NCBI GenBank assembly: GCA_047495785.1
Contig: JBLDXI010000019.1
Span: 434,001 to 498,000 of the forward strand
Direction of reading: 5' to 3'
Source of the DNA: Lepidodermella squamata
Taxonomy: Eukaryota > Animalia > Gastrotricha
Length of the DNA stretch: 64,000 nt
In this document: one piece after another, positions 4,918 through 46,254 of the stretch
How the letters are laid out: each line of letters begins with the position of its first letter
Position numbering within the stretch: the first letter of the stretch is position 1
The notes under the pieces: model-generated
What the model was told of the DNA's origin: nothing
Databases searched by the model: none
Seen by the model: the letters and a program-made list of their open reading frames with translations, nothing else
Translations under genes and position numbers: made by a program

Positions 4918-5099
4918 CGAGATGTAAAAAATGCGCGAGTGATTATTACCTCGCCCCTCGCCCTTTGAGAAGAGGACACTGCTCCTCTTTTTAGCGGATT
5001 GAATAGGCTCAATGGGTCTCGCTATTTCGAGTGAAATTGTCGGTTAAATGTGAAACAAAGTCCTGTTATTATCACCTACTTAATTTATTGCCGATAACC

Positions 5100-18049: not shown

Positions 18050-18087
18050 ATTCTACACGTACCCATAAATTGACCTTGGCATTTTAA

Positions 18088-18484
18088 CCCTTAGCCGCCG
18101 GCGCAATGACGTGTAAACTCGAGCACCTTTCAGAAAATCCCAGAAAATCAAGAAGAGGCTAAAATCAAATTCTGAGTCGGCAGAAAGTCTTACATTTAGC
18201 CTTAGATTGAAAGCCGAACCTCTTTTTCAGAAATTTACCTGGTTTCCCGTTGCTATGACGTGTTAACGCGTTTTCATGACGTGTTAACAAGTCATTTAAA
18301 ACTTTTCTCACTATTTTCGACCTGGTCAGAATGGCTTTGAATTTGGATTTTCGGGGAGTGCTTGTTTCTTGCTATTGATTTATCGTAATTTATGACGCAA
18401 CAATGGCTTCAATAGCCCACATCCTCCGACTACGGTGAATTTTCTCCGGAATTAACGCGTGTACACGTCTTCGGCGGCTAAGGG
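18088..18484. mobile_element. piggyBac-type MITE (397 bp)
   Basis: TIR CCCTTAGCCGCCG with perfect TTAA TSDs (18084-18087, 18485-18488). Confidence 0.85.
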
Positions 18485-19112
18485 TTAAGTTGGCTAGCTG
18501 TTAATAGCAGCTTAGTGTGAACAACAGCTAATTATGTAATTATGAATCATCGCTGCATCTTTTGCATGGCGATGATTCATAATTTTTGCAAAAAAATCAC
18601 ACCAAGAGTGATGCATGATGCATTATGGGTAATCCTTGGTTGCTTTGTTTTTTGGTTTGAAAAGCAGACATAATTGTATGGCTATGATTATAACAAGTAA
18701 AAAAGAAAAGAGAAAACAGCATTCGTAGAGACATGGTAACTGAATTCATTATTGCTCATCAATCGATAATCACGGCTTATCAGATTAGACAGCCCGAGGA
18801 AACCTGTTGGGTATTGTAACTGCTTCATTATCAAGTAACATAATGCTTGTTTGTGATCAGAGGGAGCATTGAGACAGCGCCCTACTTCCCATCAAGCTAA
18901 AGTGATCATCTTGAATTTGTCTACCAGAAAGCAAACGAACAGCTACAAATTTGAATCCGATCCAGATAGTTCAAAGCCATGACAGGCTTGGTCTTAGAGA
19001 TTTGAATCAGAAAAATTATACTGTCAGCACTTGAGCACAGACAATTTTAAATTTTCCACAATTTTAAAGATGGATCTAATTGTCACTTTGTTTAAATCTG
19101 TAACATCTTTAA

Positions 19113-19243
19113 CATGGCCTACATTTTGCCGCCAGGCATTTTGCCCTACGACGCAGCATTGACCCGAAAAGAGGACTTTTTGACAGACCCAGGATTTGGG
19201 TCCAAATATCGGATCTCGCAGTCTATTTTTGGCAGTTAAAGTG
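19113..19243. mobile_element. Solo right-end TIR of the 16176-17335 family
   Basis: Near-identical to 17200-17335, ending GGCAGTTAAAGTG. Confidence 0.75.
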
Positions 19244-19573
19244 TCAAGGCCATTTGATTGACGACGACAACTCACTTATCGGTGTCCGGCCGTATAGCTG
19301 TTTTAATGAAATGATACTTTTTATTACCTTGAAATTGTTTATTGTTCAATCGCGAACTAATGTTAAGTTGTTAAGTAATGTGAAGACTAAACAGTTTTGA
19401 TTGAATGGTCGTTGCATTCGATTATTTTCCGACATCGGCCGTTGAAGGCGCATTTTCGCGTTTTCTCCAACAGCGTCATACATTTTTAAGGTGGAAATAT
19501 CCGATAAGACAACGCTCCATCCTGCCCCAGAGCTTGTTACTTGATAATTATTAGGCTCTGGGGTTTAACGCCG

Positions 19574-20078
19574 TCATCCGCCCCCGCTTTGTTGGACATA
19601 GACCACACCGCTTGGTTTCGGCTGGCTTCTAGCCTGTTGCTGGCCAGCCCCATGGCTAGCGCCCCTGTCTCGCAGCAATTTGGCAACGCTATTGTGGCCC
19701 TCGCGTTCCGCAAAGTACAGAGCATAGCCGCCATCGTATTTCTTAGAATTTATATCGGCACCATGGTCGAGCAGCAGCTGAACACAGCCCTTGTGGCCGT
19801 AGAAAGTAGCTTCGATAATCGCCGTTGCACCTTGGTGATTGCGAATCTCAGTATTAGCCCCAGCTTCAAGCAGCATTTCGACGATATCATAGTAACCAGC
19901 TGAAAAATTGCGAAAAATCATAACAAATTGAGAATTATTTAGGTTATTAACCTGCCGAGGCGTAGATTAAAGCGGTGAATCTCTGACCGTCTTGAGCGTT
20001 GACGTTGGCACCTTGTTGAAGCAGGCGCCTGACCATGCCAACATTTCCAGACCTAGCAGCGTCGATGAGTTGGGACAT
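19574..20078 (-). CDS. Small ankyrin-repeat protein, 2 exons (20078-19952, 19899-19574)
   Basis: MSQLIDAARSGNVGMVRRLLQQGANVNAQD...; GT-AG intron joins to the ORF with further ANK repeats. Confidence 0.85.
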
Positions 20079-20394
20079 TTACAACGTTACTTGAATAAAA
20101 ACCGAAAACCAAATATGGAACGCTGTAAGAAAGGACACTTGCTGAGAACACATTCTTTTTATCTATTACACTTTTATAGCCCCAATAAAAGAAAAAAACA
20201 AGGCATTATTCAACCTGGAATAATTTCTTGTGCCTGATAAGACATTGGTACATGTTGAATCACCGGGATGCTATTCAAGCAACCTTTCCTTAAAATTCTC
20301 GATTATCATTGGAAGATTATTCATCTTAAATAATCGAATTTTTAATCATTAAGATAATGCATATTTTATTAGTCTGATTATAAAATTCAAATCA

Positions 20395-21520
20395 TCAGCG
20401 TGTGTTCGACTTTTTAACCTGTCCAATAACTGAATCAACGATATAAGCATCAATCAAAGTTTCTTCGTGTTTCCGCAACGGATGTTCGATTACAACGGAG
20501 CCGGATCCTTTCGAAGCATGCCATTGCTCGAAAATATCAGCAAAAGCCTCCGCTTCATACGCCAGGGCCTGGGCATTAGTATAATTGAACTCCAGCCCAT
20601 CGCTCGGCGACTTCAGCCCAGGGTAGGTCTCATACACCTCGGTCGTGATCGAACCATCCTGACGGGTAAGTTCCAACACTTGCGGCGTCCAAAATGGCGC
20701 CTTGATTCTGGCGCAGACAAACTCAGAGCCAAATTCGAAAAATATCTTGGCGTCGCAAAGTTCAGGATGACCGGACCTAGCGTCGATTCGGAAAACTGCG
20801 TTTTTCCCGTTCTGATAATCGAGAGAAACAGTAGCAGCCATATCGACCCCGTGTTCGTTTGAAACACAACCCATTGACGTGATTTTGCTTGGTTTCGCGC
20901 CAAAAACCATAGTGGCGAGTTGGAAGCAATAAACACCGATATCAAGCATCGCCCCACCCCCTAATTCCGGCTTAACGACCCGCGGGTTGAATTTATTGAC
21001 CACTGTGAAGTTGCCCATTACAGCTGTTACATTGTGGGTGGCTAGAATTTCCCGTAGCCGAGCGTAGACTGGGTTGAAACGGCTCCACATACCCTCCATA
21101 ACTAAGACGTTATGCTCCTTCGCTTTGTCTAGCACTTTTTGGCTCTGCTCGAGGGACATGGTCATAGGTTTCTCGATCAACACGGCCTTACCAGCTCGAA
21201 TAGCTGCCAGGGCTACAGAGGCATGGTCTGGGTGCAATGTCCCAACGTAAACAGCATCTAACATAATTAAAAAAAATAAGAAACATTAATTAAAGAAATT
21301 CCTTACTTATTTCGGGATCAGTGATCAGCTCATCGTAGCTTCCATATGATTTCGGTATTTTAAATTTTTCGCAAAATCTTTTAGCCGAATCTAAAGAAGA
21401 TCGGGAGGCTGCGGCGACAAATTCATGACGCGGAGAGTTGAGTCGCGAAACGCTGAGAGCAAAATCGTGAGAAGCGGCTCCACAAGCCGCAAATCCCCAC
21501 TTTAATTTGACTCCGGACAT
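20395..21520 (-). CDS. DHDH: Trans-1,2-dihydrobenzene-1,2-diol dehydrogenase / D-xylose dehydrogenase (Gfo/Idh/MocA), 2 exons
   Basis: LKWG N-terminus, EKP motif, EGMWSRF.P and LGGGAMLDIGVY; intron 21258-21306. Confidence 0.85.
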
Positions 21521-21690
21521 CTATGAAATAAATAAAAAAAACTAATTTTTCTCGAAATTTTGGAATTTCGAAACGTTCGCGATTCCACTACTAATGGTAT
21601 TATGAGATGAAATGCGGGCGGGGCAGACAATTTATTCATTTTTCATTCAACTGGAAATTTACGACAGGGACAATTAAAATTATTTTGTTT

Positions 21691-22915
21691 TCACAGCAGT
21701 TCTTTCCACGATTTAGCTCCAGGTATGCGTTCGTACGCAACTCGTTCCGGCTTTCCGCTCAACCTCGACGCTTCAGCTGCGTCAGATATCAGCATTGAAT
21801 TCACAACATCACGGCCTAAAATGAAAGAACCAAGCTGTTTCTTAGCGGCCTCATCTCCGTCAAGATGAGCTTTGACTAGTCTCAGAAAATGTTCAATTGA
21901 AGCGCGGTAACTCTCGCCGTATCGTTGCGGAAAAGATGGGAAAATCGGCGAAGTCATCGTGCTTTGGTTCAAATTTTGTTGATTAGCTGCAACCGTGATA
22001 GAAAGACCGTTTTGCCGCTGATTTCGACTTTCAATCATTCCTTTCTCGCAAAAAGCTTCCACCCTCTGGTCGTAGCCGTAATTTGCCAGTCGCGATAAAT
22101 CAAGGCTGGCCATAAACGCGTTAGGGTGCGAAAATTTCATAGTGATAGCCAGGGTGTCTACATCGCCAATACTAGCAACGCCTGGGTCGTGACAGGTTGC
22201 CATAGTGAAAATTTCGTCAGGGAAACCGCCAGCCAACCAGCAAACCAAATCAAAATCGTGAATTCCAAAATCTTTCACCATGCCACCTGATGTCTTCAGA
22301 AACTCGACCGGAGGCAAAGGACAGTCTCTGGTGCACGAAAAACTTATGTAAAATATACAAGTGTTGCAGGGATCAACAGACCTTCCCACAGTTTTTATGA
22401 CCAAAGGCTGTCCAAGAGCTCCACTTTTCAGAGTTTTTCGCATCTCAGCTAACGTCGGGTCGAATCGCCGATTCATGCTGCAGAAAAGCGGGACATTTCG
22501 CTCCTCTGCCAAGCGATATAATTCGGCAGTCAGCTCGGCCGTAGTTGCTAGCGGTTTCTCACAAAACACACATTTTGACGCCAATAATCCAGCTTAAAAA
22601 AAATTGAATTTCACCTGATGTCTAATTTTGGTTTAATATCTCACCTCTAACAATTGCTTCATGCTCAGCTGTTGGCGTTGTCACGACTATCGCGTCGATT
22701 TCATCCGGGGCTAACTTCAACTGCAATTGATCTGGTGTGAAAAGCAGTTTGCGAGGCTCTTTTACGCCGATATCTGTGAGGTAGGTGATAGAAGCATCAT
22801 GAGCTGTGGCAATCTCAAAAATAGCGACAAGATCAGCTAGCGGGCTTCTCAGTAGATTGCCAACGTGAATCTTGCCAGCTCGGCCGAATCCACAAACTGC
22901 AACCTTGCAAGGCAT
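21691..22915 (-). CDS. myo-inositol 2-dehydrogenase-like oxidoreductase (IolG-like, Gfo/Idh/MocA), 3 exons
   Basis: GFGRAGKIH Rossmann motif, CEKPLA, NRRFDP, SGGMVKDFGIHDFD and YGYDQRVE; two short introns. Confidence 0.85.
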
Positions 22916-23222
22916 TGAAATCGTGGTTTTGTATAGCGCGCGATAAAATTTAGCAAATACAAATTTCGAGCGTGAAATTCCCCCTACAACGTTACGCATC
23001 ACCGGCTTTTACTACATTGTTGATACAGCAGGACGATTTTACCATATGATAATGAAAATGCAGGCTGATGGGGTTCATAATTAATACGAGTCTGATCCCA
23101 TGGTTCAATTTCGATGGATCGCAATTTTATTGCCAATAAATCGAAAAATCATCACAGTCAGAATTTCCCATGTTCAACAGAATTAAATCACAAATTCAGG
23201 TGTCAAAGCAGATTATTTCTCA

Positions 23223-26200
23223 TTATTTCGCTTTGATGCAGAATGTGCGAATTTGCATCGGCCTCATTAGAACAGCATTCCAGTCGTCGTGACCTGATTC
23301 TTCAGCAAGACGACGCAGGCCAAGTGGGTCAGCCCCGGCATTATTACTATCACCAGGCCATTGGAGTCGCGTCAAATCGCTGATTGGCATATTAGCGCCG
23401 AGAGCCAACTCGCTGATGTCAATATTCGCACTACCAGTCAAGGTTGTCGCGAAATTTAGAAGTGGGACTGATGTGTTTTGAGACAGCTGTTGATCCTCAC
23501 CAGCTTCGAACAAATGCTCCAATCTTAGTAGAAAATCACAACCGGCGAAATTTCTCTCCAGCGTCATAAGATGAATATTTTCAGGTAGGCTAACGTCAGA
23601 TTCTTGCAAAATTGGCTTCCCAGCTGAAGTCTGAAAAAAACAGATAAAGGAATTCTTGTAAATTTAAACGAATCGAGCTCTTTTACCGTTAAATGTAACC
23701 CGGCCTCAAGCCATTCGCCTCGGCTCGAAATCGACGAAAACGCAATCATTGGCTTATTCATCACCATCTGGCTCAATTTACGGTAATTTTTCGCCGCTGA
23801 ACCCGGAACATTCAAGGCCAGACGGACGTGCCCAGTCGCAACCAAGCCATGGCCATCTTCAGTCTCCATCAACGCCTCGGCAACTCCGAAATTGTCGTCT
23901 TTTGTCAGCCGCCGGTGGACCATTAGTTCGAGGGTCCCATCGCGGAAACCAGTCGCACCTTGAGCTCGATCGGTGATCGCTGTTAACTGAGCCTTCTTAT
24001 CACGAGTGCTGACTCTGGCTACGATTGGGTAGTAATTCTGCGAGACATTTTGGGTCGGAGCCAACTGCCAAGTCGATCTATTTTTGGCATAATGTCAAAT
24101 CATTGAATTTGACCTAGTTTTGGACAATTTAATTTTTCTTACCGGGTATCACGCTGCCGCCGTTGCATTTCCCTACCATTAGCATCGGTGAAGAATTCCC
24201 CATTATTGGCGATTGAAGACTCGAAAAATGACACAACCTCGCGTCCAACAGAAGGCTTTTCGACCGGAATCGGGCCAACAACCCACTGCGTATCAACATG
24301 AGCCTCGCCGTCATATAAACGATAGATGGACTTGGCCCAGCTCGAATGGTATCGGTGTATTTCAACAACTTGCTTGCCAGCCAAAGTCAACGTTTCGCCG
24401 TCTTCGAAATGATTCAAATTATTCGAATCCGGGTTGAATCGATACGCGCCAGAGGTAGGCTTCGGCGGCATTGCGGCCATGTAATAGGCCATTGTGTGCC
24501 GCAGCTTAACTTCGACCTTTTCGATTTTATTCTCCAATCGTTCGATTACACCCCGGTCGTTAAGATGGAGGCGTAAGACGCCGTTATCGAAAATTTGACC
24601 ATCCGATTTCCGTTGGACTGAAGCAAGCTCGAGTTGATTCGAGGGTTTGATGAAGTAAACAGAAGTCCCTAAAGCTGGCAGTTCAGCTCGGAAAATTAGT
24701 TCGTGGGTTGCGGTTGAATTTCCGCGGGTTGGAATCGAACCGATATCGCCGGGTAAAATCGGCATCAAGTCGCTGATAACTGGCTGGCCATTGGCGTCCG
24801 TCACTGCGAAACCGCCAACTTGTGTCACTTGAACCGGAACTCGAAGCCACGTGGTCGATTTTTGGGCAATAGGGTTGTAGATCAATACCGAGAATCCCTA
24901 ATTTGGTGAAACGGGCAATATTACAATTTTCCGAAATAATTTTAATTTTCGATAATTAAAACGTGGAAAAATTATCGAAGTTAATGAAAAATAAATTGCG
25001 AAAACTTCGAGTTTTATAAATTTTCAATCAGACTACCTGCGAAGATGCTTGTTCCGAGAATGGACAGTAAGATTCGTTTAGCAGCGGGCAGAAAGTTAGT
25101 TTAGGCGATTGGCAGTTTGAATCGTCCTTGCATAGCAGTTTCTCGAAGGCATTCGATGAAACATTTCGAGCAATCGAAATCGCCCGAGCGGCTCGCATGC
25201 GCGCATCATTAGTAACAGCCTGAAAAAAATGTCATCGAAATAGTAATGAAAATAATAAAATTGCGAAACTCAATGATAATTTTAAGGGGGCTTTTCAGAA
25301 TTTTAACGGGTTTCCCGTTAGCGCCCAGACCATGATCCCGCATCCTGACTCAAAAATGGATGCGATTTTCGGAATCTAGGCTAAAATAAATGGTATATTC
25401 CAAGCTCCCGGGAATTTTTCCAAGTTCCCCGACGAAGTTAGGGTATTACGTCATACCCTGTACTTTTCCCTATATTAATATTATCTCACTAATACACTAA
25501 CAACAATCTAAGTACTGGACAATCTAAGTAATCAACAAATTTTTGACAAGAATACCATTTTCAATTTGTTTCCGATCGCCTTAATCAATCGGCCTCGTGT
25601 GGGCCGTAATGAAATCGGAAAAAATCCGTCAAAAAAATGGGGGGTCGTGAGTCTTGTTTTGACGTGAATGTAATGTCCGATTGATCGAATTGGTATCGAT
25701 TTTCGAAGATGGGAATCCCACCCTGCTTAGGTAACAGTAGAGGCCACATGCCAAGCCATACATCAGTAGATAGCTGGGATTATGATCTACTTGAATTTGG
25801 CATAGTCCGGGAACTTGAAAACCTCCGCAGAGAAAGAGATAGATCCAAAAACCACGTTCCCAAAGGGGAACATACGGCGCTAACGGGTTTAAATAATTTC
25901 ATTGAGGTTCCAGCACCGAATTTCGAGCTTCCCAATTATATTATTACGATTTTTAGCGATATCAACCTGTTATTTTCTTGATCGTTATTGATGCTGCACA
26001 TGACCTGATGATTTCTAATCAAGCAACTGGGTACCATCGGCTAGTTGGAATTTTTTGAAATTTTGGCTGTCTAGAGTGATCGGAAAAATCACTGATTTGA
26101 GAAATCGATACTTTGAATCGATATCGGCTTGCAGGCTGAAGTGTAGCAAATAAAGTAAAATATCTTGTCGAATTTTGGGAATATTTGAGGTGTCCAATTG

Positions 26201-33836: not shown

Positions 33837-35687
33837 TCCTATAGCATTAGCAGAAAAGAAATAAGAAATTTCGAACCAGTTCCAAGAATCTGGGCCTGAG
33901 AAAGGACGATCCTATTGTTTCAATGCGTTGCGGGGGATTCTAACTTCCTTTGTAAATTGCAAAAGAATCTGAAATTTGTTAGCGAACATTTTATGCGAAA
34001 ATTTGGCATTATTTGAAGCAAAGATGTAGAAGGTTATATCTGATTTTCTGGCAAATTTTGCGAATTTTCCTAATTTATCTGATTTTTTTTGCAATTTACA
34101 AAGGCGATTAATAGCGATTAATTTTGGATGCTTTACGGTATTACCTGTAATTTTTCCACCATTAGAGTTTGTAAGTAGCTGTGACCTATGATTATGTTCG
34201 AACCTGCTATGCTAGTAAAGCTTTGTTTGAAAAGCCGTTGGGACTAAAATAACAAAAATCAGGTCCAGGTTCAGCTAGACTTTTTTATGCCACCAGCTCA
34301 AGTTGTTCATGCAGAAACAATTAGTCCACCTTGATAAGCTGAATGCTTCATAATACGCGAGAAGGTCAGTTCGTGAAAAAAGTCTTTAACATTACCTGAA
34401 AGCTTCAAGGTTGGCTGAAAAATTAACAGAAAAGTTTCAATAGCCGCATGTATTCATTATCTCCGAGCATGTTTTTAGCTGTGATGAACTATCTACACGC
34501 CGGTGGAATCTCAGCCTTGTATCTTCACATTATAGGGTGACTCATGTGCCTTACGATGACTTCGCTGCGGTTAGGGTTGGAATATCTTCAGAGATTTCAC
34601 ACGATTAACTGATCCATTCATTCGTCAGAATTTCGGATTACTATACTTGAGATTAACTTGAGAAGAGTCAATGGTGAACATTTTTATTACCTACACACCA
34701 CGATACCAAAAAAGGTCCAGGTGTACTTCAATTATTTTATGAGCGTTTAAAGTGTTTGGCATCTGCGAAATCTCAGATGGAAGCCTGAATAAAGTTATAC
34801 TCGAAATTTATTCAGCTCGACCTATAGAACAAAAGCAGCTTCCCTCTATCGAAAACTATTTTCCAAGTCGAACCATACGTTTATGCAGTAGTAGGTATAG
34901 TTTTTGCCTCATCTCGCCATAATATTGTTGACAATATTTCGGTAGCTGTTTTAGATCATTTCTGCCATTAAAACTGCAAGCTGAATAAACAATTCCATTC
35001 AACAGGAATTTCACTTTACGACTTGAATTACTACAATATTTGGGTAGACATTTTTTAACATTGCCAAAAAATGACCAACTTGTCCAAAGCATGGGAAAAT
35101 ACAAAGCCACGGCAAGATAAGAGCCCAGATTCTTTTAAATTCCCATAGGTTTTGAACGTAATAGATTTCAAGAAAGCAGCTGTTTTTTCGCTTCCAAGAA
35201 CGCGCTCCGACTCTGGCTCAGTATCGCGATTATTTTCCCGGCAACTGGCTGGTTCATTTCAGGGCGTGGCAACGTCGATACAGGTATAATTTATGATTAT
35301 TTACCCTCCTTATGACCAGCATGAATAGCCATTGCAACAGCCCACGATACAACACCTAAAATACTGCATTTTTTCAAGTGTATATAGCAATATAAAAGAA
35401 TAATTGGCACGTGCGTTAAACACCCTACAATTAACTACAACATCTTCTATAAGATCTCAGCATGGAAGAAGAGTACTATCTGCCCGACGTTATGACATGG
35501 TTATTGTCGATTTATCTTCAGAGCTTCTCAATTTCATTCTGTTAAGCGAAATCTTACTTCGATTGAGCTTTTGTTTCCAATCTCTACTCCTATATAGCAT
35601 TCTTTGTGTCACAGTGCGAGAAATGACTCATTTTTCTCACTGATATTTTTTTGAAAATTTAGGCATCAAAAGGACGAATCGCGGACG

Positions 35688-36512
35688 ATGATAGATGACG
35701 AAAGCGTTTTCTACTGCTACAAAGTCGTTCTACTCGGCGATTCAGGAGCTGGAAAAACGGCATTGCTAACTCGATTTACCGAGGATACTTTCAATCCAAA
35801 ATTTTCATCCACGATTGGCGTTGATTTTAAGATGAAAACCGTTGACATAGATGGCCGGCTTATGAAACTTCAAGTAATTAAAAATATTTAATTTCGGGAT
35901 TATTTTTGTTTAATAATTTTTCATAGTTTTGGGATACTGCTGGTCAAGAAAGATTTCGAGCTGTTGTGACAAGGTGATCAAAGGAAAATTGATTTATTCG
36001 GGCTAATGACAATTTTCCTTTAAATAGCTATCACAGAAGCGTAAATGGTGTAATTTTAATTTATGACATAACCGATAGAAAAAGCTTCAACAGTATTGCG
36101 ACATGGAAACGAGTTGTTGAAGAGGTAAAAAATAAGATATTATTTTACAAGCCTAGCCTTAAATTGCTTTCCTATATAATTTTAGTACAACCCTAGAGAC
36201 GATTTCGCATTAGTGATTATTGGAAATAAATGCGAACTCGAAAATTTGAGAAAGGTCGCCACAAGTGAAGGTCAACAGGTGAGCTTGATATCGTAATTTA
36301 TTTTAATAAAAATTCCTATTTGATAGCTTGCCGATGATCACGGGGCATTCTTTTTCGAAGCTTCAGCGAAGGAAAATATCAACGTCAATGAGGCTTTTAT
36401 GGCAATAGCATCTGCCATCAAGCATAGCAACAGCAGTAAACTTCACCTGGGTGATTCTCATAAATTGAAAGACAGCGAACCGGAAAAATCGGGGCGTTGT
36501 AGCAAATGTTGA
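35688..36512 (+). CDS. Rab GTPase (Rab1/8/10/13-like, divergent), 5 exons
   Basis: [34 protein letters not shown]; ends GRCSKC*. Confidence 0.9.
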
Positions 36513-36942
36513 TTTCTTAACTCAATAATCACTTAATTGAGTTATAATGCTAGTCTGAAAAATTCAGAATTTTATTGCCGTTTTTTTATGTAAAAATAAA
36601 AAAATGTATAAAAAAATAAAAAATCCAAGAAACATAAAAAACTAGCAGTATCCTTACTCATCTTGGCTAGGTCATACGCAGGTTTCATCGTAATGCTAGC
36701 TATTCAGGTCACTTTGCCGAAAGATCCTGGTAAGCAAACAGTCACGGTTTTTTGCCATTCACGCGTGATGTAGTAACGAAAGACTTAAACATCAATTAGC
36801 GCTTAGTGCAGTTACGTTCTGTTCGAACTTTCTGTAACGAGCCTGTTAACGTCACTTCAGCCTACACTAGTCACGTTGTAAACAAACTTCTACCTATAAG
36901 AGCTGGGCAAAATCTGGGTGAAATTTGTCAAATAGACACAAA

Positions 36943-38920
36943 ATGAACTTGTTGAAATATTCTGCTATTCTCGCGATTTTTCCGGCGTTGGCTTCGGCGC
37001 AATGTGCTGGTTCTTATGGCCAATGCGGCGGCAGTGGTTGGTCAGGGCCGTCGTGCTGCAACGCTGGCTGGGAATGCGTTGCTTCTGATACGTACTACTC
37101 ACAATGCCGGCCGGCGACCGACTCGGCCTGTAGCAATGCTTTCTACGCCCAATGCGGGGGTAAAAACTGGTCTGGATCTACGTGTTGCGCAGTTGGAAGC
37201 ACCTGTATCAGCCAGAATGAGTATTACTCCCAATGCACACCTGACGATTCGAATCCGACCCCGGCGCCTACTTCATCGTCGTCAACACAGAAACCAACAT
37301 CTACGGCCCAATCGACCCCGGCTACAAAAAGCTCGACTTCAACCTCAAAGCCGACGTCTTCGACAACGAAGCAATCCTCAGCATCAGCATCTACTGCCAC
37401 TGCTACTAAATCAGCTTCGACTGCAACTAGTTCCACAGCCAAACCAGCTTCAACTGCAACGAGCACTACAGCTAAGCCAGCTTCGTCCTCAACTACTTCC
37501 AAGTCATCGGCAACAACTCAATCATCGCCTTCCGGCTTCAATTACGCCGAAGTCCTCGGCAAATCGCTGACCTTCTACTACGGCCAAATGTCTGGTAAGA
37601 TCTCCGGAACGTTCAACACCCTCGCATGGCGCGGGGACAGCGCGTTGAACGACGGATCCGATGTTGGGGTCGACCTAACTGGTGGCTACTACGACGCTGG
37701 GGATCACGTTAAATTCAACTTCCCACTCTCATTCTCGCTCTACACCCTAGCTTTGGGTGGGATCCACTACGAGGACGTCTATCGAGCGACTGGGGAAGAA
37801 TGGCAACGTCTGTTGAACGTCATGAAATGGGGCACGGATTACTTCATCAAATGCCACACTTCGACTTACGAATTTTACGGACAGGTTGGCCGTGGCGATC
37901 TGGATCACAGCTACTGGGGTCCGCCTGAGAAAATGACCATGCAAAGGCCGAGTTACAAAATTACAGCAGGTAGTCCTGGTAGTGATTTAGCTGGCTCAGT
38001 CGCCGCTACCTTCGCCCTGTCGTCGATTTTGTTTAAAAATGTTGATAAGACCTACTCGGATACTTTGTTGAGGCATGGCCGGGAGATGTGGGATTTCGCC
38101 ACCAAATACCAGGGTACCTATGTCAACTCGATTAGTGACGCTAGAAACTACTACAACAGCTTTTCTGGATACGCTGATGAGCAACTTCTCGGGGCTTTAG
38201 CTCTTTACTGGGCGACAAATGAGACAAAATACCGCGATTACGCTGTTTCCAACTCGAGGAATCTTGTTAAATCTTCCTTAACCTACGCGCATGGTTGGGA
38301 TGATGCATCGTAAGTTCATTTTTTCCACATATTTTTCGGGTACATTTTCAGCTTTTATTTTCAGGTATGCTAACGTCTACCTTCTCTGGAAGTTATTAGG
38401 CGACAGTGATGCTCAGAATGTTTTTGAAAATTACGCGAATAATTTCATGAACAACGTGAGGAAAACGCCTCAAGGAATGGTCTATCTCAGCGATTGGGGA
38501 TCAGCTAGATTCCCGGTCGCGACCAGCTTTTTACTCATGTGCTACGTCGATTCGAACCCCAATCTATCGACGACGAAAGCAGCGACCTATCAGGCATTTG
38601 CTTTGAAGCAGTTGAACTACCTGCTCGGCAATAACTCGAATGGGTTCAGCTATTTGGTAGGATTCGGTAGTAAATTCCCGCAGCACACGCATCATCGCGG
38701 CGCCCACGGCTCGACGACTAATAACATGTACGACCCGCCGACGAATAAAAACATCAATTACATGCTGGTTGGCGGGCCTGATGCTAACGACGGCTATGCT
38801 GATAGCATTTCGAATTACTCGCAGTCGGAGGGTGCCTGTGATATGCAGGCTAGTTTACCCGGCTTGGCTGCTGCTCTGGTTAAACGGTTCGGTGGACAGC
38901 CTCTAGTGAATTTTCCTTGA
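36943..38920 (+). CDS. Secreted endoglucanase: signal peptide - CBM1 - CBM1 - Ser/Thr linker - GH9; 2 exons (intron 38310-38364)
   Basis: Two YxQCGG..W.G..CC.......YYSQC modules; GH9 motifs DLTGGYYDAGDHVKF, HHRGAHGS and LVGGP..ND.Y.D....Y.QSE; TATA-like CTATAAG near 36894. Confidence 0.92.
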
Positions 38921-40386
38921 AGCGACTTGAAAGTGGACTTCAACAACAACAAATAATACTGACCAATGATAGAAATCCGTTTGAATATTTATATATTGAT
39001 TGAAAATGCAATGATTTTAATGAAAACCGACTTTTATGGTCTAAGCATCGTCAACATTTTGTAACAATTTTTTTCGAAACAGTGGATGATTCGTGTTTTG
39101 AATTTCACTCAAATTGGTACCGTTCAGTGAATGAGTGTTTTCCATGTGTTTTCATAATTCCGCTGGAATTGTGCTATTTTTTGAGGTTTTTGAGGTATAC
39201 TTCTGCCAAAAATGCATTTCCAAGAGGCGATCATATTTTAAGCCCTAAATCGCGACAGACGGCCAGAAATTCGCGAAATTCGCGGCATTTAGCTAAGTTT
39301 GATCTTATTTAGATGATCATTATTTTCTGAGAAATATCAAAAACAAAATTTGATACCGCAGCTGGACAACGTAGAGCGTACGTTGTAGCAGGGTGCAGCG
39401 ACAAAACAGCAAATTTTTTATTTCGCGACAAAACAGCGAAAACTTATTATGCCAAAGATGCAACGTGTTTCTGCTGTTATTCTCGCAAGTTGAAAAATTT
39501 GCTGTTTTGTCGCCTTTGCTGTTTTGGGCTTTTGCTGCTTGGCCGGTCATCCCGTTGAAGCTGTTGAATTTTTTTGAAACAACGGACATATTTTTTACCA
39601 CATTTTAAGCGAAAATCAGTACAAAATTGGTACATTGACACGGGTGGGTGAATTAAGCCGGAAATAAAGAAACACTTTCCCTGTATCAAATTTCAGAGGC
39701 TCAATGATTGGAGAATCAAACGATCATATTTCACCAAAAGTGATTGATTTTTATTGATTTTTTCGGCTTTTTTACATCGAAAGCGCCTGCGAGAATTCCT
39801 GCAAATACTGCTATTTTCGCCAAGAAAGGATCGTTTGAATCGTTTGAAAGTGGCTATAATTTTAACTATAATTGCCTCCAGTCCCTTTACTCGCTAGGAA
39901 TCGGCGTGTCTAAAAATCGGCTGTAACATAAGTCAGAAAAATTGAACGTTTGTTTTGCTCTGCTCCTCTAACATACTGGCGGTAATCTGATTGCAAACAA
40001 CTTTGGTAAAATAATCGAAAAAAATTCGAGGAAATTGAAATCGAAATTCCAAATCATCGAAATAGCTTAGCCCTAAAATCCTCAAAAAATTGGTCCCGTG
40101 GAAAATTAATGTTGGCGGTATAAGCGGATCTAGGCCAGGACCAAATGAAACAAATGAGAGTTGAAATGTCAAAGAATGTGAAATGTGAAATTGAGACCCG
40201 ATAATTATTACCACAGATTTTTATTCAAGAATTACCGTTTGTTTTTAAATGAATTTATTAAAGCAATGATATAATAATGTCTGACAGTGCTGGACTCTGC
40301 AGAAGGCATTCTCAATGTCGCGCACCAACAGGCAGCTCTGTAAAATAATGTTCCGATGAAATCTGGCAGTACTATCTGGCATTTGG

Positions 40387-41223
40387 TCATTGCGCCGTCG
40401 GCATTTGCTGAGGATCTGTCCCGCCATGACTGATGAGCAGTTCGATAACGCCCTCGTTCGCCTCGTTATAACGCGCCTTTGTCAACGCTGTCGCATCAAA
40501 TTGATTGCGCGCATTAACATCAACGCCTCGCTCAAGCAATAGCGCGACTATATCACGGTGGCAGTTGACGGCAGCCTGCATCAGTGGCGTGTCGCCGTCG
40601 TTGTTCGCAACATGAACATCAGCGCCGCGTTCTATCAGCAGCTCGACAATATTGCGATGGCCTCGATACGCTGCTTTCAATAGAGCAGTATCGCCGTTGT
40701 TATTCGCCGCGTTCACATCGACCCCCCGATCCAACAGCGCCTTGGCGTAGTCGAAATACCCACGCTCAGCAGTCATCATCAGCGTTGTAGTGCCGTCCTC
40801 TAGCGCTACAGTCACGTCAGCACCGGCAGAGAGCAGTAGGGCGAAACTTTCGTTCAAATTGTTGACAATAGCCAAAATCAACGCTGTGTAGCCCTCGAAG
40901 AATCTCGTATTCAAATCCGCGCCGTTGTCGATCAAAAAACGAGCTATTTCGATGTACTGCCGCTCTATCGCGATAACCAGCGGCGTTTTACTGGCTAAAT
41001 CTGTCGCTTGGGCGTTGACCTTAGCTCCTAGGGCGATCAATGTGCGAAGAGTGTCGATTTTGCCCTGATTGCACGCCATCATCAACGCCGTCCAGCCGTC
41101 GATGTGCCGCGGCTGGTTGATGTCGACGCCTTCTTTCGCCATCTCCTCGATTTTGTCCGTATCGCCCCAGAAAGCAGCTTCGAACAACGCATCGGGCTGT
41201 GTCGTAGTCTCGGATGAAGCCAT
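40387..41223 (-). CDS. Intronless ankyrin-repeat protein
   Basis: About 7-8 ANK repeats (G.TAL..A....G....V.LL...GADV). Confidence 0.9.
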   Translation of the reverse strand: MASSETTTQPDALFEAAFWGDTDKIEEMAKEGVDINQPRHIDGWTALMMACNQGKIDTLRTLIALGAKVNAQATDLASKTPLVIAIERQYIEIARFLIDNGADLNTRFFEGYTALILAIVNNLNESFALLLSAGADVTVALEDGTTTLMMTAERGYFDYAKALLDRGVDVNAANNNGDTALLKAAYRGHRNIVELLIERGADVHVANNDGDTPLMQAAVNCHRDIVALLLERGVDVNARNQFDATALTKARYNEANEGVIELLISHGGTDPQQMPTAQ

Positions 41224-42831: not shown

Positions 42832-43728
42832 ATGCCGCTCCAAATATCTCCGGCTGAAATTGAGAAATTTGTCGAACTCGCCGGGCTCGGGGATTTGGAT
42901 GAAGTGGAGCGACTTATAGTTAACGGTGTCGACGTCAATGTCCAACGCGGGAGTGACGGGAGGACGGCTTTAATTCACGCAGCAGACCGCGGGAAGGTCT
43001 ATATGGTTGAGCTACTCCTTAAACACTCTGCTGATCCTAATTTACGGGAGAAAAATCAAGGAAAAACCGCTCTAGTCTTAGCCGTTGAAATCTACTCAAA
43101 CGACGTCGCTAAACTACTACTGGACCATAAGGCCGATGTAAATATCCCATATCGAGACAGCAACAACGCCCTATTCGCAGCGTTTGAGGTCGACAACGAC
43201 GTTGGTTTCAGCTTAATATTAGAGGCAGGCGCCGATGTGAACGCAACGTTGTGGAACGGTAATACGATACTGATGTGTGCCGCCGAGCGGGATCGGTTTG
43301 ACCTCGTTAAAAAACTGGTCGATAAAGGCGCGGATATCCATGCGAAGAACAAAAGCGGCGAGTCTGTGCTGTACAAAGCCGTGTGTCCCGGCAATCTGGA
43401 AATGGTCGACTACTTTGTGCAGAAGGGCGCGAATTTGGCTGATATTGACGATGACGGCAATACGCTACTTATGACGGCGGCTCTTCTTCGCCACCTCAAT
43501 GTTGTGAGCTACCTCATAGAAAAAGGTGCTGATGTCAACGCGAGGAATCACGCTGGTGATTCGGCTCTTGCGATTGCGAGATACATGGATAATAACGACG
43601 ATGTTATCGAGTTCTTACTGGCGAAAGGTGCGGAAGACTCGGAGGTTGAAGATGAGGATGACGACGAGGACTATGAGGAGAATGCTGATCCTGCGGAAGT
43701 CGCTGATCATGAGCAACCGCTTGGATGA
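42832..43728 (+). CDS. Intronless ankyrin-repeat protein with acidic tail
   Basis: About 8 ANK repeats; D/E-rich C-terminus. Confidence 0.9.
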   Translation: MPLQISPAEIEKFVELAGLGDLDEVERLIVNGVDVNVQRGSDGRTALIHAADRGKVYMVELLLKHSADPNLREKNQGKTALVLAVEIYSNDVAKLLLDHKADVNIPYRDSNNALFAAFEVDNDVGFSLILEAGADVNATLWNGNTILMCAAERDRFDLVKKLVDKGADIHAKNKSGESVLYKAVCPGNLEMVDYFVQKGANLADIDDDGNTLLMTAALLRHLNVVSYLIEKGADVNARNHAGDSALAIARYMDNNDDVIEFLLAKGAEDSEVEDEDDDEDYEENADPAEVADHEQPLG

Positions 43729-43870: not shown

Positions 43871-45040
43871 TTACTTGGACAAGGCGAAGCCAAGGCGGTT
43901 CTGGCCGAAGTCGAATTCGGTGTAGAAGCGGCCGAGGAAAACATCGCCAAGGATCCACTGGGGTCCATCGGGAATGTCGAGGCTCATGAAGCCGCTGATG
44001 CATTCGGTCTGGGTGCCTTGGGTGTACTGAAGAATGTAGTCGTTGGGTTCCAGGGTGAAGCTACGGCCGCCGAGGACGATCTTGATGTTAGGCAGGCTGG
44101 AGATGGAGTCGCAGTCGACGACGTACTCGCCGCTTCCGTCATCCTGAGCTCCGATAGCTTGGTTCAAGGCGTCGACGTCCTGGCTGGGGCCGGTGATGAG
44201 GGAGGTGCCGGTATCAGCGATAGCCTCGCAACCACCGTTGCAGAAGGTCTGGGCGCCGGATCCTGAGCCGACAACAACAGCGTCCATCTTGAACTGCCAG
44301 TAGGTCTGGGCGTCGACGGGCAGGTAGGTGAACGAGCCGCTGTAGTGGTTAGGGTCAGATCCGCCGAGGATCAATTCACCACCAGCCTTGGCGCCCTCGG
44401 TACGGTCGAGCCAGAAGGAGAAAACTGGAGCAGCAACAGCGCCCTGGGAAACCATGACTTGAAAGACTGGAGTAACGCTGTCGACGGCAAGAGCTGGGTA
44501 GGCCATGCCCAAGATACCGTCGAAGGAGGCTGAGGCGAAGGGGATCGCCGGCTCGTGGGTCGATTCGGCGAAGGTGACACCGTGAGCGACAACTCCGGCA
44601 ATGCTGATGTCGTCCTTGCTGAGGACACCTTGCATGGAGCCTGAGCCGTAGGTGATCGAGAAGGAAGTTCCGTTAGCGACGTAGGTCGACGACTTGGTGT
44701 GGTCGTATCGGGCGTGCTTCTTGCAGGCGACGCCGTTGCAACGGGTCGATGGCACCCACAGGTTGGCGGATCCAGTGTCGAAGAGGACCTGGAAGTTCTG
44801 TGGCGGGTTACCCATGGTGATCGGGCCGTAGTAGGTGGTGTCCATGTAGTTGTTCAAGGGTTCCGGGTGGGGCTTGGGGCCCTTCGAGAACTTGTTCTGA
44901 AGGCGAGCTCGGACCATCTTTCCGAACTGCTTGCCCATAACCTCTCGGGCTGAAGGAGCCCGGGTGAGGGGGATGCGGCGCAGCTCCTCAGCGAGAGCCT
45001 GCCCGGCGAGCAAAACAACGATAGCCAAAGCGAATTTCAT
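43871..45040 (-). CDS. CTSD: Cathepsin D-like aspartic protease (intronless)
   Basis: Signal peptide and propeptide; catalytic FDTGSANLWVPS and ADTGTSLI; FDGILGMAYP; WILGDVFLG; TATA-like TATAAAA about 55 bp upstream. Confidence 0.93.
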   Translation of the reverse strand: MKFALAIVVLLAGQALAEELRRIPLTRAPSAREVMGKQFGKMVRARLQNKFSKGPKPHPEPLNNYMDTTYYGPITMGNPPQNFQVLFDTGSANLWVPSTRCNGVACKKHARYDHTKSSTYVANGTSFSITYGSGSMQGVLSKDDISIAGVVAHGVTFAESTHEPAIPFASASFDGILGMAYPALAVDSVTPVFQVMVSQGAVAAPVFSFWLDRTEGAKAGGELILGGSDPNHYSGSFTYLPVDAQTYWQFKMDAVVVGSGSGAQTFCNGGCEAIADTGTSLITGPSQDVDALNQAIGAQDDGSGEYVVDCDSISSLPNIKIVLGGRSFTLEPNDYILQYTQGTQTECISGFMSLDIPDGPQWILGDVFLGRFYTEFDFGQNRLGFALSK

Positions 45041-45420: not shown

Positions 45421-46254
45421 TCACTTTTGCTGAGGATCTTTAGCTCCCTTCTCGACCAACATCGTGACGATGTTTTCGTTATTAGAAGTGTAACGCGCCT
45501 TCGTAAGAGCCGTAGCGCCGTAGTAGTTGAGAACGCTATGGTCTGCGCCTTTCTCCAGCAAAAATTGAACCATGTCAGCTCGACCGTGAATGGCTGCTTG
45601 CATCAAAGCCGTTGAGCCGTCACTATCCGTCGCATTTAGATCCGCACCTTTACTTATGAGATACTCGGCAATGTCCTTCCGCCCGTAGCAGATCGCGATG
45701 AATAACGCTGTTTCACCGTTGTCGTTTTTCACATGGAGAGAGGCTCCTTTCTCTACTACCAACTTGACTTTTTCCAACTTACCACGTTCTGTTAAAGCCA
45801 TTAGAATTGTGTTGTTGTTGTAGTAGGTCTTGTTAACATCAGCCCCAGCGTCGACTAGGAAATGAAACGCCTCCTTATTCCCACCCTCCAGAGCCATAAA
45901 TAAGGCTGTATATCCATCGAGAAATGTAGCGTTGATATCGGCGCCGTTTTCGATCAAAACCCTAGCGATTTCGTTGTGCTTTTCCTCGACGGCAATTATC
46001 AACGCCGTTTTGCCGTCATTGTTCTTCGCGTTGACGTTAACTCTGTATTTTAGTAAAGCCGTAACTGACTGAATTTTGTTCGAAAAACAGGCGGCCATCA
46101 ACGGCGTGTTCCCGTCATTGCTTCGACCTTCATTCGGATTAGCCCCAGCTTTTATCAACTCATCGATGAGTTGGGTATTTCCTAGTCCAGAGGCTGTTAT
46201 CAACTTGTCGAGAATCGACTCCTCTGCATATGACATTGCACGATATCGAAGCAT
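45421..46254 (-). CDS. Intronless ankyrin-repeat protein
   Basis: About 8 ANK repeats; paralogue of 40387-41223 (shared ATALTKARY and DPQQ). Confidence 0.9.
   Translation of the reverse strand: MLRYRAMSYAEESILDKLITASGLGNTQLIDELIKAGANPNEGRSNDGNTPLMAACFSNKIQSVTALLKYRVNVNAKNNDGKTALIIAVEEKHNEIARVLIENGADINATFLDGYTALFMALEGGNKEAFHFLVDAGADVNKTYYNNNTILMALTERGKLEKVKLVVEKGASLHVKNDNGETALFIAICYGRKDIAEYLISKGADLNATDSDGSTALMQAAIHGRADMVQFLLEKGADHSVLNYYGATALTKARYTSNNENIVTMLVEKGAKDPQQK

What the first reader, a model, noticed from the sequence alone, without database searches (positions are those of the whole stretch)
36943..38920. Chimeric cellulase: two fungal-type CBM1 modules fused to a bacterial-type GH9 in an animal genome, with a spliceosomal intron
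Seen: signal peptide, two CBM1 repeats (QCGG..W.G..CC...YYSQC), an S/T linker, and a GH9 domain with intact catalytic DAGD and C-terminal Glu. A 55-nt GT-AG intron matches the neighbouring host genes. Established: CBM1 is chiefly a fungal/oomycete module, and animal GH9s usually have no CBM or a CBM2/CBM49-type module. From recall of family motifs, this catalytic domain looks like bacterial Cel9A/E4-type enzymes. It has YYNSFSGY, HHRGAHGS (animal GH9s typically HHR.SSCP), and a terminal FGGQPLVNFP resembling the GGTPLADFP linker that precedes CBM3c. Inference: horizontal acquisition plus cross-kingdom domain shuffling, now domesticated for digesting cellulosic (algal or plant) walls.
Basis: partly seen in the sequence, partly recalled or inferred. 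Interest (0 to 1): 0.82.

Follow-up and report, generated by a model that had tools for sequence, protein, structure and literature searches.

The report
Giant-virus-type cellulase gene in an animal
A small invertebrate carries an expressed, spliced gene for a secreted cellulose-digesting enzyme whose closest relatives are cellulase genes of giant viruses, not those of other animals, so it was very probably acquired by horizontal transfer from that viral gene pool.

Summary
Window 36943-38920 (+) is a two-exon gene for a 640-residue protein: signal peptide, two CBM1 modules, a Ser/Thr linker and a complete GH9 domain with the catalytic Asp pair and Glu. Contigs from two independent runs skip the 55-nt intron exactly, and one ends in poly(A). 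The neighbouring genes are ordinary animal genes.

The GH9 is not the inherited animal type: an AU test rejects that placement (p about 1e-82). It is the bacterial "theme B" (E4-like) type. However, its nearest relatives, at 50-55% identity, are GH9 genes on giant-virus (Nucleocytoviricota) contigs. The animal gene is nested among them (support 100/99, 100/98, 100/97), and an AU test rejects placing it outside (p 1e-7).

Several of the viral genes already carry a C-terminal CBM1 of the same six-cysteine kind. They also share an unusual catalytic-acid motif with the animal gene. The GH9-CBM1 pairing is therefore probably older than the transfer. The animal copy then lost CBM3c, has its CBM1s at the N-terminus and gained an intron.

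Two unchecked first-reader notes describe 3xCBM1-GH9 genes on other pieces of this genome. The host species was not identified.

The parts
36943..36999 (+). Predicted signal peptide, residues 1-19 (MNLLKYSAILAIFPALASA, with cleavage expected before Gln20)
   Evidence: Read directly from the translation. No predictor was run.
37000..37107 (+). CBM1 module 1, residues 20-55. Six Cys, with aromatic residues Tyr25, Tyr51 and Tyr52
   Evidence: Pfam CBM_1, two stretches, E 3e-20. Module comparison.
37126..37236 (+). CBM1 module 2, residues 62-98. Six Cys. It is 53-57% identical to the C-terminal CBM1 of the viral GH9 proteins of L007 and L008 in BLASTP local matches
   Evidence: Pfam best stretch 68-95. 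BLASTP against the viral proteins. Module comparison.
37237..37530 (+). Ser/Thr/Ala/Pro-rich linker, residues 99-196
   Evidence: Translation. No Pfam domain was found here.
37531..38309 (+). GH9 catalytic domain, first part (rest of exon 1). Includes the catalytic Asp pair DAGD, residues 251-254, at 37693-37704
   Evidence: Pfam Glyco_hydro_9 E 2.6e-84. Best PDB match 8u49 at E 5e-80.
38310..38364 (+). Spliceosomal intron, 55 nt, GT..AG, phase 2, lying inside the conserved WDDAS|YANVY segment
   Evidence: Exact joint 38309>38365 in contigs of X2 (195 nt on the short side) and X3. The homologues are uninterrupted here.
38365..38920 (+). GH9 catalytic domain, second part, plus the stop codon. 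HHRGAHGS is present, catalytic Glu611 is at 38828-38830, and the protein ends at ...KRFGGQPLVNFP
   Evidence: Pfam E 6e-40. PDB alignment to theme-B enzymes. Motif table.
38921..39044 (+). 3' UTR up to the poly(A) site
   Evidence: Loose end of 19 A's behind 39044 in an X2 contig.
35688..36512 (+). Context: upstream Rab GTPase gene on the same strand, with three short introns
   Evidence: ORF translation with the GDSGAGKT motif. GT..AG joints at 35873/35927, 36122/36184 and 36276/36325 in X3.

Best explanation
This is a resident, expressed gene of a small invertebrate. It encodes a secreted modular endo-beta-1,4-glucanase: signal peptide, two cellulose-binding CBM1 modules, a flexible, probably glycosylated Ser/Thr linker, and a GH9 catalytic domain.

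The catalytic domain descends from the GH9 genes carried by giant viruses (Nucleocytoviricota). Those genes are themselves of the bacterial theme-B kind (GH9 followed by CBM3c) and often end in a CBM1. After transfer into the animal lineage the gene lost CBM3c: the protein stops exactly at the GH9/CBM3c linker. It also came to carry its CBM1 modules at the N-terminus, gained a host-type 55-nt intron and a poly(A) site, and was duplicated (other copies are noted elsewhere in the genome).

Likely mechanism: the CBM1 pair docks the enzyme on crystalline cellulose of ingested algal or plant cell-wall material. The GH9 cleft then cuts the chains by inverting hydrolysis, with Asp251/Asp254 as base and Glu611 as acid. 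Without CBM3c it probably acts as a non-processive endoglucanase.

Shown: the gene model, splicing, polyadenylation, domain content, catalytic residues, the phylogenetic position and purifying selection on the GH9 domain. Inferred: direction and route of the transfer, secretion, substrate and digestive role.
For: Gene and expression.

Host context is animal:
- Cathepsin D at 43874-45040(-) is 53-58% identical to insect, mollusc and coral orthologues.
- The window also holds a lysosomal alpha-mannosidase, a Cys-loop receptor domain, a 7tm_3 hit and a Rab gene.
- DNA run X1 covers the gene and its flanks at similar depth.

Phylogeny:
- A careful ML tree of 72 GH9 domains puts the gene sister (100/99) to seven sequences. 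The next branches out are P0193 (100/98) and P0180 (100/97).
- The AU test rejects joining it to the 34 animal-type GH9s (delta lnL 195, p 1e-82).
- The AU test rejects holding the nine virus or virus-like rows together without it (delta lnL 107, p 1e-7).
- Each exon alone gives the same placement.

Viral nature of the relatives:
- L006 is an IMG/VR 'GVMAG' contig with XPG/FEN1 and patatin genes.
- L007 (244 kb) has an intronless Rpb2 and a ribonucleotide reductase small chain within 8 kb of its GH9-CBM1 gene.
- L008 (151 kb) has its GH9-CBM3-CBM1 gene near GH6, UvdE, RING and ankyrin genes.
- L013, which carries P0180, has a Capsid_NCLDV hit (E 8.5e-8), a fused topoisomerase II and ankyrin genes.

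Shared derived characters:
- The catalytic-acid motif is NEVAxDYNA, or a one-residue variant of it, in nearly all bacterial, animal and chytrid rows (and in P0180). It reads SQSEGACDMQA here and GQTE(C/G/S)C(M/N)D(M/T)(Q/N) in five of the seven sister rows.
- The six-Cys CBM1 subtype is shared with the viral genes.

Selection: variants between this window and the other runs are 10 synonymous to 2 non-synonymous in the GH9 domain.

No closer relative than about 55-60% identity exists in 1.84 billion representatives, the word search, IMG/VR or the JGI metagenomes.
Against: - The animal gene is sister to, not inside, the seven best-documented viral sequences. Its nesting depends on P0180 (a well-supported NCLDV contig) and P0193 (only a 3.9-kb virus-like contig).
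- The viral genes have CBM1 at the C-terminus and keep CBM3c, so at least one rearrangement is needed. The CBM1s could have been added in the host.
- CBM1 is too short to trace: it is 50-58% identical to fungal, viral and unknown modules alike.
- No other virus-derived gene was found beside it. The neighbouring ankyrin gene has no close viral relative.
- An unsampled cellular donor, such as the viruses' host, cannot be excluded.
- Viral assignment of the metagenomic contigs rests on marker genes and IMG/VR labels, not on isolates.
- Enzyme activity, secretion and tissue of expression are untested.
- The groups for the AU tests were fixed after the first tree had been seen.
Confidence: 0.68

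Rival explanations
1. One reading: the animal took a GH9 directly from a bacterium. Inside the animal genome it was then fused to CBM1 modules taken from a separately acquired fungal gene.
For: - The domain is of the bacterial theme-B type. Over exon 1 it is as similar to bacterial genes (up to 56%) as to viral ones.
- CBM1 sits at the opposite end from the viral proteins.
- Post-transfer replacement of a binding module is documented in anaerobic fungi (PMC11291939).
- A bdelloid rotifer GH45 carries a cellulose-binding module of the CBM1/CBM10 kind (PMC6509783).
Against: - Full-domain and per-exon trees place it within the virus group with high support, not with any bacterial clade.
- It shares the derived QxE..D(M/T)(Q/N) catalytic-acid motif with the viral genes only.
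- The viral relatives already carry the same six-Cys CBM1.
- There is no intron at the CBM1/linker/GH9 junction to suggest exon shuffling.
Confidence: 0.12
2. A common cellular donor: an unsampled protist, alga or early fungus owns this GH9(-CBM3c)-CBM1 lineage. The giant viruses that infect it and the animal that eats it each captured the gene independently.
For: - CBM1 is a eukaryotic module, so the viral genes must have met a eukaryotic genome at some point.
- The animal gene is sister to the main viral group, not inside it.
- Chytrids have GH9+CBM1, although in another GH9 clade.
Against: - No cellular member of the clade appeared in an exhaustive scan of 1.84 billion representatives or in the other collections. 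Every member with context sits among dense, intronless genes that are viral-marker-bearing or orphan.
- The group spans GC 31-48% and several unrelated viral contigs. This suggests long residence in viruses.
Confidence: 0.17
3. It is the ordinary, vertically inherited metazoan GH9 that has evolved fast.
For: - Animal GH9s appear among the word-search hits at 46-56% identity over exon 1.
- A cricket GH9 has an intron only 13 nt away from this one.
Against: - The AU test gives p 1e-82.
- The motifs are HHRGAHGS, not the animal HHRSSSCP, and the gene has the theme-B C-terminal linker.
- Exon 2 scores about 107-123 bits against bacterial theme-B structures but 70-84 against animal ones.
- The cricket intron differs in both position and phase, and the Clytia gene is intronless.
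Confidence: 0.01
4. Contaminant DNA or a chimeric assembly join.
For: - No single short-read contig spans from the Rab gene through the whole cellulase.
- The genome's proteins are absent from the protein collections.
Against: - The intron is of the host type: 55 nt, against 48-61 nt in the Rab gene next door. It is spliced in two runs and the mRNA is polyadenylated.
- The stretch is present in three separate studies.
- An X1 contig (36582-37041) runs from the intergenic DNA downstream of the Rab gene into the CDS. Depth is similar across the gene and its flanks.
- GC is 44.6%, against 36-53% (mostly about 42%) across the window.
Confidence: 0.02

Closest known systems
GH9-CBM3(c)-CBM1 cellulase genes on giant-virus (Nucleocytoviricota) metagenomic contigs: IMG/VR GVMAG-M-3300023179-119, UViG_3300034106_005797, UViG_3300042539_001336, and JGI contig Ga0654431_0000163
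   Same: - The catalytic domain is 50-55% identical.
- They fall in the same clade (support 100/99 to 100/97).
- The non-canonical catalytic-acid motif is shared with five of the seven sister rows.
- They share the KR(F/Y)GGxPLxNFP end of the domain.
- The CBM1 is of the same six-Cys subtype.
   Different: - The viral genes are intronless, keep CBM3c and carry a single CBM1 at the C-terminus. One of them, P0180, is fused to GH48.
- The animal gene has no CBM3c, has two N-terminal CBM1s, a signal peptide, an intron and a poly(A) site.
Bacterial theme-B GH9 processive endoglucanases (Thermobifida fusca Cel9A/E4, PDB 1JS4/4TF4; Clostridium cellulolyticum Cel9G, PDB 1G87)
   Same: - Same fold and catalytic residues (DAGD and Glu).
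- Same HHRxAHGS motif and same GGxPLxxFP linker.
   Different: - This gene has no CBM3c, which these enzymes need for processivity.
- The acid motif is SEGACDMQ instead of NEVAxDYNA.
- It has eukaryotic CBM1s in place of CBM2/CBM3.
- It falls in a separate clade.
Inherited metazoan GH9 endoglucanases (termite NtEG, PDB 1KS8; earthworm, PDB 3WC3; crab, krill, cricket and Clytia genes)
   Same: Same family and same reaction. These are also secreted digestive enzymes of invertebrates.
   Different: - They form a different, well-separated clade (AU p 1e-82).
- They typically read HHRSSSCP.
- They lack the theme-B linker.
- The introns are not shared.
Horizontally acquired cellulases of bdelloid rotifers (Adineta ricciae; Szydlowski et al. 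2015, Gene 566:125, known here only through its citation in PMC6509783)
   Same: A micro-invertebrate with foreign, intron-bearing, expressed cellulase genes. At least one of them (a GH45) carries a cellulose-binding module of the CBM1/CBM10 kind.
   Different: - That case involves a different enzyme family, and the donors were reported as fungal or prokaryotic.
- No giant-virus link has been reported.
- No rotifer orthologue of the present gene turned up in any search.
- The paper itself could not be read.
Chytrid GH9+2xCBM1 (Nowakowskiella sp. JEL0407, KAJ3123334.1)
   Same: GH9 joined to six-Cys-type CBM1 modules in a eukaryote.
   Different: - The CBM1s are C-terminal.
- The catalytic domain belongs to the chytrid/animal-type clade, far from this gene.

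Membership tests
Glycoside hydrolase family 9 (Pfam PF00759) | Sequence match to the family profile over the whole (alpha/alpha)6 domain | tested here: met
   Exon 1 scores 284 bits over profile 1-264 and exon 2 scores 138 bits over 300-443, against a cut-off of 27.7. Matches to solved GH9 structures reach E 5e-80.
Glycoside hydrolase family 9 (Pfam PF00759) | Catalytic residues: the Asp pair in DAGD (base) and the C-terminal Glu (acid) | tested here: met
   D251 and D254 lie in YYDAGDHVKF. E611 aligns with the catalytic Glu of 7unp, the position that the variant entry 7v0i carries as Gln. The motif around it is non-canonical.
Glycoside hydrolase family 9 (Pfam PF00759) | Hydrolysis of beta-1,4-glucan | not testable with these tools
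   Needs the recombinant enzyme on CMC, PASC or Avicel.
CBM1 (Pfam PF00734) | Module of about 36 residues with the conserved Cys pattern, the QCGG core and three surface aromatic residues | tested here: met
   Two stretches, 72 bits against a cut-off of 20.6. Both modules have QCGG and YYSQC plus Tyr25 or Tyr68, and six Cys each.
Theme-B GH9 (GH9 fused to CBM3c; Cel9A/E4 type) | A CBM3c module directly after the catalytic domain | tested here: not met
   The protein stops at ...GGQPLVNFP and the mRNA ends 124 nt later. There is no CBM_3 hit. The relatives P0001, P0021, P0056, P0122 and L008 do have CBM_3.
Theme-B GH9 (GH9 fused to CBM3c; Cel9A/E4 type) | The catalytic domain groups with theme-B enzymes, not with animal, plant or theme-D enzymes | tested here: met
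   Tree and motifs. The PDB ranking of exon 2 agrees.
Vertically inherited metazoan GH9 clade | Monophyly with animal GH9 sequences | tested here: not met
   The AU test rejects it: delta lnL 195, p 1e-82.
Vertically inherited metazoan GH9 clade | Shared intron positions | tested here: not met
   The cricket intron is phase 0, after WDDKSTGAS. This one is phase 2, in the Ser of WDDAS, 13 nt away. The Clytia gene is intronless. Only two animals were compared.
Giant-virus (NCLDV) GH9 lineage | Nested among GH9 genes that lie on contigs with NCLDV marker genes | tested here: met
   Tree. The AU test rejects exclusion at p 1e-7. Markers seen are Rpb2 and RNR, Capsid_NCLDV at 32.6 bits (just under the 34.8 cut-off) with topoisomerase II, and the GVMAG label.
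Giant-virus (NCLDV) GH9 lineage | Derived catalytic-acid motif Q(S/T)E...D(M/T)(Q/N) in place of NEVAxDYNA | tested here: met
   Motif table of 72 sequences. The motif is present here and in five of the seven sister rows; the P0021/P0056 pair and P0193 carry other non-canonical forms. The deepest viral row, P0180, keeps the canonical motif.

The most novel reading that the evidence does not exclude
An animal domesticated a cellulase gene taken directly from a giant virus (Nucleocytoviricota), and the gene has since expanded into a small family in the host. Another note on this genome reports a Trl1-type RNA ligase whose nearest relatives are also on giant-virus-like DNA. Together the two cases would point to giant viruses as a recurrent source of working genes for a metazoan. 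They would also point to an undescribed group of giant viruses armed with full cellulase sets (GH9-CBM3-CBM1, GH6, GH9-GH48).
Probability: 0.45. Interest if true: 0.78.

Novelty: new variant of a known kind. Interest (0 to 1): 0.62.

Why it matters
Foreign cellulase genes in micro-invertebrates are known, and animal GH9s are the textbook example of an inherited animal cellulase. This gene shows a second, independent GH9 lineage in an animal, and its source is the giant-virus gene pool, not a bacterium or fungus.

If that holds, three things follow:
- It adds giant viruses to the documented donors of functional metabolic genes to animals.
- It gives a dated series of domestication steps to study: module loss, module relocation, intron gain and duplication.
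- It draws attention to giant viruses that encode multi-enzyme cellulose-degrading sets, which the literature I could search barely mentions. A 2025 preprint calls a cellulase-like gene "potentially novel" for cultivated giant viruses (PMC12338748).

Tried and rejected
Host identification failed.
- A word search with the Cys-loop receptor ORF (12843-13988) gave nothing at E 1e-10 or better.
- An exact look-up of the cathepsin D found no record.
- Rfam and tRNA scans of the window were empty.
- The cathepsin D search showed only that the host is an animal with no close proteome in the collection.
- Run names are coded.
- Other agents' notes say 'probably a rotifer'. I did not verify this, and the roughly 42% GC is higher than I recall for published bdelloid genomes.

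Other tests that led nowhere or were negative.
- Shared intron with animal GH9: the cricket intron is near but is not the same site or phase.
- Co-transfer of neighbours: the adjacent ankyrin gene has no close relative in IMG/VR.
- The metagenome scan returned 80 loci, all GC-rich bacterial genes with the canonical motif. None was closer than 56% and none belonged to the clade.
- CBM1 origin: the modules are too short. Identities of 50-58% to fungal, viral and unknown modules do not discriminate.
- Green-algal GH9 'CBM1': the paper shows those modules are not CBM1.
- The Szydlowski 2015 paper is not held.

Not done.
- No structure prediction was run, because the full spliced protein has no reference and the family assignment is already secure.
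Full report
**1. What is there**

The sequence at 36943-38920 (+) reads as a two-exon gene.
- Exon 1 runs from the ATG at 36943 to 38309.
- A 55-nt GT..AG intron (38310-38364) splits a Ser codon.
- Exon 2 runs from 38365 to the TGA at 38918-38920.
- Joined, the CDS is 1923 nt and encodes 640 residues with no internal stop.

Pfam finds two CBM_1 modules (E 3e-20). It also finds Glyco_hydro_9 in both exons: 2.6e-84 over profile positions 1-264, and 6e-40 over 300-443.

The protein has five parts:
- a hydrophobic leader, MNLLKYSAILAIFPALASA (read by eye);
- CBM1 module 1, residues 20-55;
- CBM1 module 2, residues 62-98;
- a Ser/Thr/Ala/Pro linker, residues 99-196;
- the GH9 domain, residues 197-640.

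The catalytic Asp pair lies in YYDAGDHVKF (D251, D254). Glu611 aligns with the catalytic acid of solved GH9 enzymes. In the 7unp/7v0i pair this position is the Glu that the variant entry carries as Gln.

**2. It is an expressed gene of the host**

The stretch occurs in three studies. When their contigs are laid on 35300-41200, runs X2 and X3 join 38309 to 38365 exactly (GT..AG, 195 and 41 nt on the shorter side). X2 covers only the transcribed part and ends in a run of A's behind 39044. The RNA is therefore spliced and polyadenylated.

Splicing restores WDDAS|YANVYLLW, which is continuous in the intronless relatives.

X3 also splices three 48-61-nt introns of a Rab GTPase gene that ends about 430 nt upstream on the same strand. 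DNA run X1 covers the gene and its flanks at similar depth. One X1 contig (36582-37041) runs from the intergenic DNA into the CDS.

The window's other genes are of animal type:
- a cathepsin D that is 53-58% identical to insect, mollusc and coral orthologues;
- a lysosomal alpha-mannosidase, a Cys-loop receptor domain and a 7tm_3 hit.

Variants between the window and the other runs are 10 synonymous to 2 non-synonymous in the GH9 domain. In CBM1-2 and the linker they are 7 to 8, with the Cys and Tyr residues kept. X1 and X3 each hold two versions of 37125-37374 that differ at 20 of 250 sites; these may be alleles or a close paralogue.

**3. Where the catalytic domain comes from**

A word search with the exon-1 GH9 part returned a mixture of bacterial GH9-CBM3/CBM2 proteins and animal GH9s at 46-58% identity, with no self or near hit. 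An exhaustive HMMER scan of 1.84 billion representatives found nothing closer than 60%.

In a first tree of 232 domains the gene fell in a small group of unnamed metagenomic proteins. All named animal GH9s sat in a separate clade.

Scanning IMG/VR with an alignment of that group found four viral contigs that encode relatives. Over the full domain they are 50-54% identical. They and one further contig look like this:
- L006 is labelled a giant-virus MAG and carries XPG/FEN1 and patatin genes.
- L007 (244 kb) has an intronless Rpb2 and a ribonucleotide reductase small chain within 8 kb of its GH9-CBM1 gene.
- L008 (151 kb) has a GH9-CBM3-CBM1 gene near GH6, UvdE, RING and ankyrin genes.
- L013 carries P0180, a 1601-residue beta-helix-GH9-CBM3-GH48 protein. 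Its neighbours include a Capsid_NCLDV match (E 8.5e-8, just under Pfam's cut-off), a fused topoisomerase II and ankyrin genes.

The remaining members (P0001, P0021, P0056, P0122, P0193) lie on short contigs of dense, intronless, mostly orphan genes.

The careful ML tree (72 domains, LG+C20) gives this branching, from the outside in:
- P0180 branches first (100/97);
- then P0193 (100/98);
- then the animal gene, as sister (100/99) to P0001, P0021/P0056, L006, L007, L008 and P0122.

Animal-type and chytrid-type GH9s form a separate clade (99/98).

Two AU tests bear on this placement:
- The AU test rejects joining the gene to the 34 animal-type sequences (delta lnL 195, p 1e-82).
- The AU test rejects holding the nine virus or virus-like sequences together without it (delta lnL 107, p 1e-7).

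Trees made from each exon's columns alone give the same placement.

Motifs agree:
- The animal-type rows typically read HHRSSSCP, while this gene, the viral ones and many bacterial ones read HHRGAHGS.
- The catalytic-acid motif is NEVAxDYNA, or a one-residue variant of it, in nearly all bacterial, animal and chytrid rows, and also in P0180.
- In this gene the acid motif is SQSEGACDMQA. Five of the seven sister rows read GQTE(C/G/S)C(M/N)D(M/T)(Q/N). The P0021/P0056 pair and P0193 have other non-canonical forms.
- This is a derived character that does not depend on tree inference.

**4. Modules**

The protein ends at KRFGGQPLVNFP. In the viral and bacterial theme-B enzymes the same motif is the linker into CBM3c. 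The animal gene has no CBM3c and its mRNA ends 124 nt after the stop. Because the outgroups and the viral relatives keep CBM3c, its absence here is a loss. This also argues against the animal being the donor to the viruses.

GH9 joined to CBM1 is not unique to this animal:
- L007, L008/L009, P0122 and P0193 carry a C-terminal CBM1.
- L006 has a truncated one.
- A chytrid (Nowakowskiella sp., KAJ3123334.1) has GH9 plus two CBM1s, although its GH9 belongs to the other clade.

Both CBM1s of the animal gene have an extra N-terminal Cys and a CC doublet, as do the viral and chytrid GH9-attached modules. Module 2 is 53-57% identical to the viral ones in BLASTP local matches. Identities to unrelated fungal modules are similar, so the CBM1s cannot be traced. 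No intron marks the CBM1/linker/GH9 junction.

**5. Intron**

The cricket GH9 gene has a phase-0 intron after WDDKSTGAS. The intron here is phase 2, in the Ser of WDDAS, 13 nt away. The Clytia gene has no intron. The intron here matches the size and splice-site form of its neighbours' introns and interrupts a segment that is uninterrupted in the viral genes. It is best read as gained after the transfer.

**6. Interpretation**

The most likely history has four steps:
- A bacterial theme-B GH9 entered giant viruses.
- There, or in their hosts, it acquired a CBM1.
- One such gene entered this animal lineage.
- In the animal it lost CBM3c, came to carry two N-terminal CBM1s behind a signal peptide, gained an intron and was duplicated.

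Two first-reader notes (s1-398089, s1-395187) describe 3xCBM1-GH9 genes on other pieces of this genome. I did not check them.

The likely function is a secreted endoglucanase that is targeted by CBM1 to crystalline cellulose in food. Without CBM3c it is probably non-processive.

The main rivals are a common unsampled cellular donor (0.17) and direct bacterial transfer followed by in-host fusion (0.12). Vertical descent and contamination are excluded for practical purposes.

**7. Limits**

- The host species is unidentified.
- Viral assignment of the relatives rests on marker genes and database labels.
- The AU groups were fixed after a tree had been seen.
- Only two animal gene structures were compared.
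- Activity, secretion and tissue of expression are untested.
- I found no paper that describes GH9-CBM1 genes in giant viruses or their transfer to animals. The library lacks most subscription journals.

Noticed in passing
L013:8001-12806 (JGI contig Ga0654431_0000163) and L008:4095-12181: Giant-virus contigs encode whole cellulase sets. One is a 1601-residue protein with beta-helix, GH9, CBM3 and GH48 domains. Another has a GH9-CBM3-CBM1 gene about 4 kb from a GH6 gene. I found no description of such viral cellulase arsenals in the papers searched.
   Followed up: partly
window 39240-39633: High-copy repeat just downstream of the cellulase gene. Contig word depth in DNA run X1 is 3,600-10,000 here, against about 100 in the flanks, with many variant contigs and loose ends.
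   Followed up: no
window 43871-45040 (-), with 40387-41223 (-), 42832-43728 (+) and 45421-46254 (-): An intronless, ordinary metazoan cathepsin D gene sits in the most GC-rich stretch of the window (53%). It is flanked by three intronless ankyrin-repeat genes. The first ankyrin gene has no close relative in IMG/VR.
   Followed up: partly
window 20395-21264 (-) and 21691-22584 (-): Two tandem GFO/IDH/MocA-type oxidoreductase ORFs, a mostly bacterial family. They may be another foreign acquisition.
   Followed up: no
window 37125-37374: Runs X1 and X3 each contain two versions of this stretch (CBM1-2 and the linker) that differ at 20 of 250 positions, at similar depth. These are either highly diverged alleles or a near-identical second copy.
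   Followed up: partly
window 12843-13988 (+): A 381-residue ORF with a Cys-loop receptor ligand-binding domain (Pfam E 1e-10). The word-based protein search found no relative at E 1e-10 or better, so this is a very divergent receptor.
   Followed up: partly
window 38943: An X3 contig starts here behind a run of 22 T's. This suggests the poly(A) end of a minus-strand transcript that overlaps the cellulase gene's 3' UTR.
   Followed up: no
L012 (Gryllus longicercus JAZDUA010000102.1): The annotated cricket GH9 'gene' of 22.8 kb spans two tandem GH9 copies (exon sets at about 501-6795 and 16589-23292). Its stated product does not translate from a single copy.
   Followed up: partly
QUERY residues 608-618; viral rows: In the query/virus clade the near-universal GH9 motif NEVAxDYNA around the catalytic Glu is replaced (SQSEGACDMQA here, GQTECCMDMQV in the viral rows). 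The Tyr of DYNA is lost. The effect on activity or specificity is unknown.
   Followed up: no
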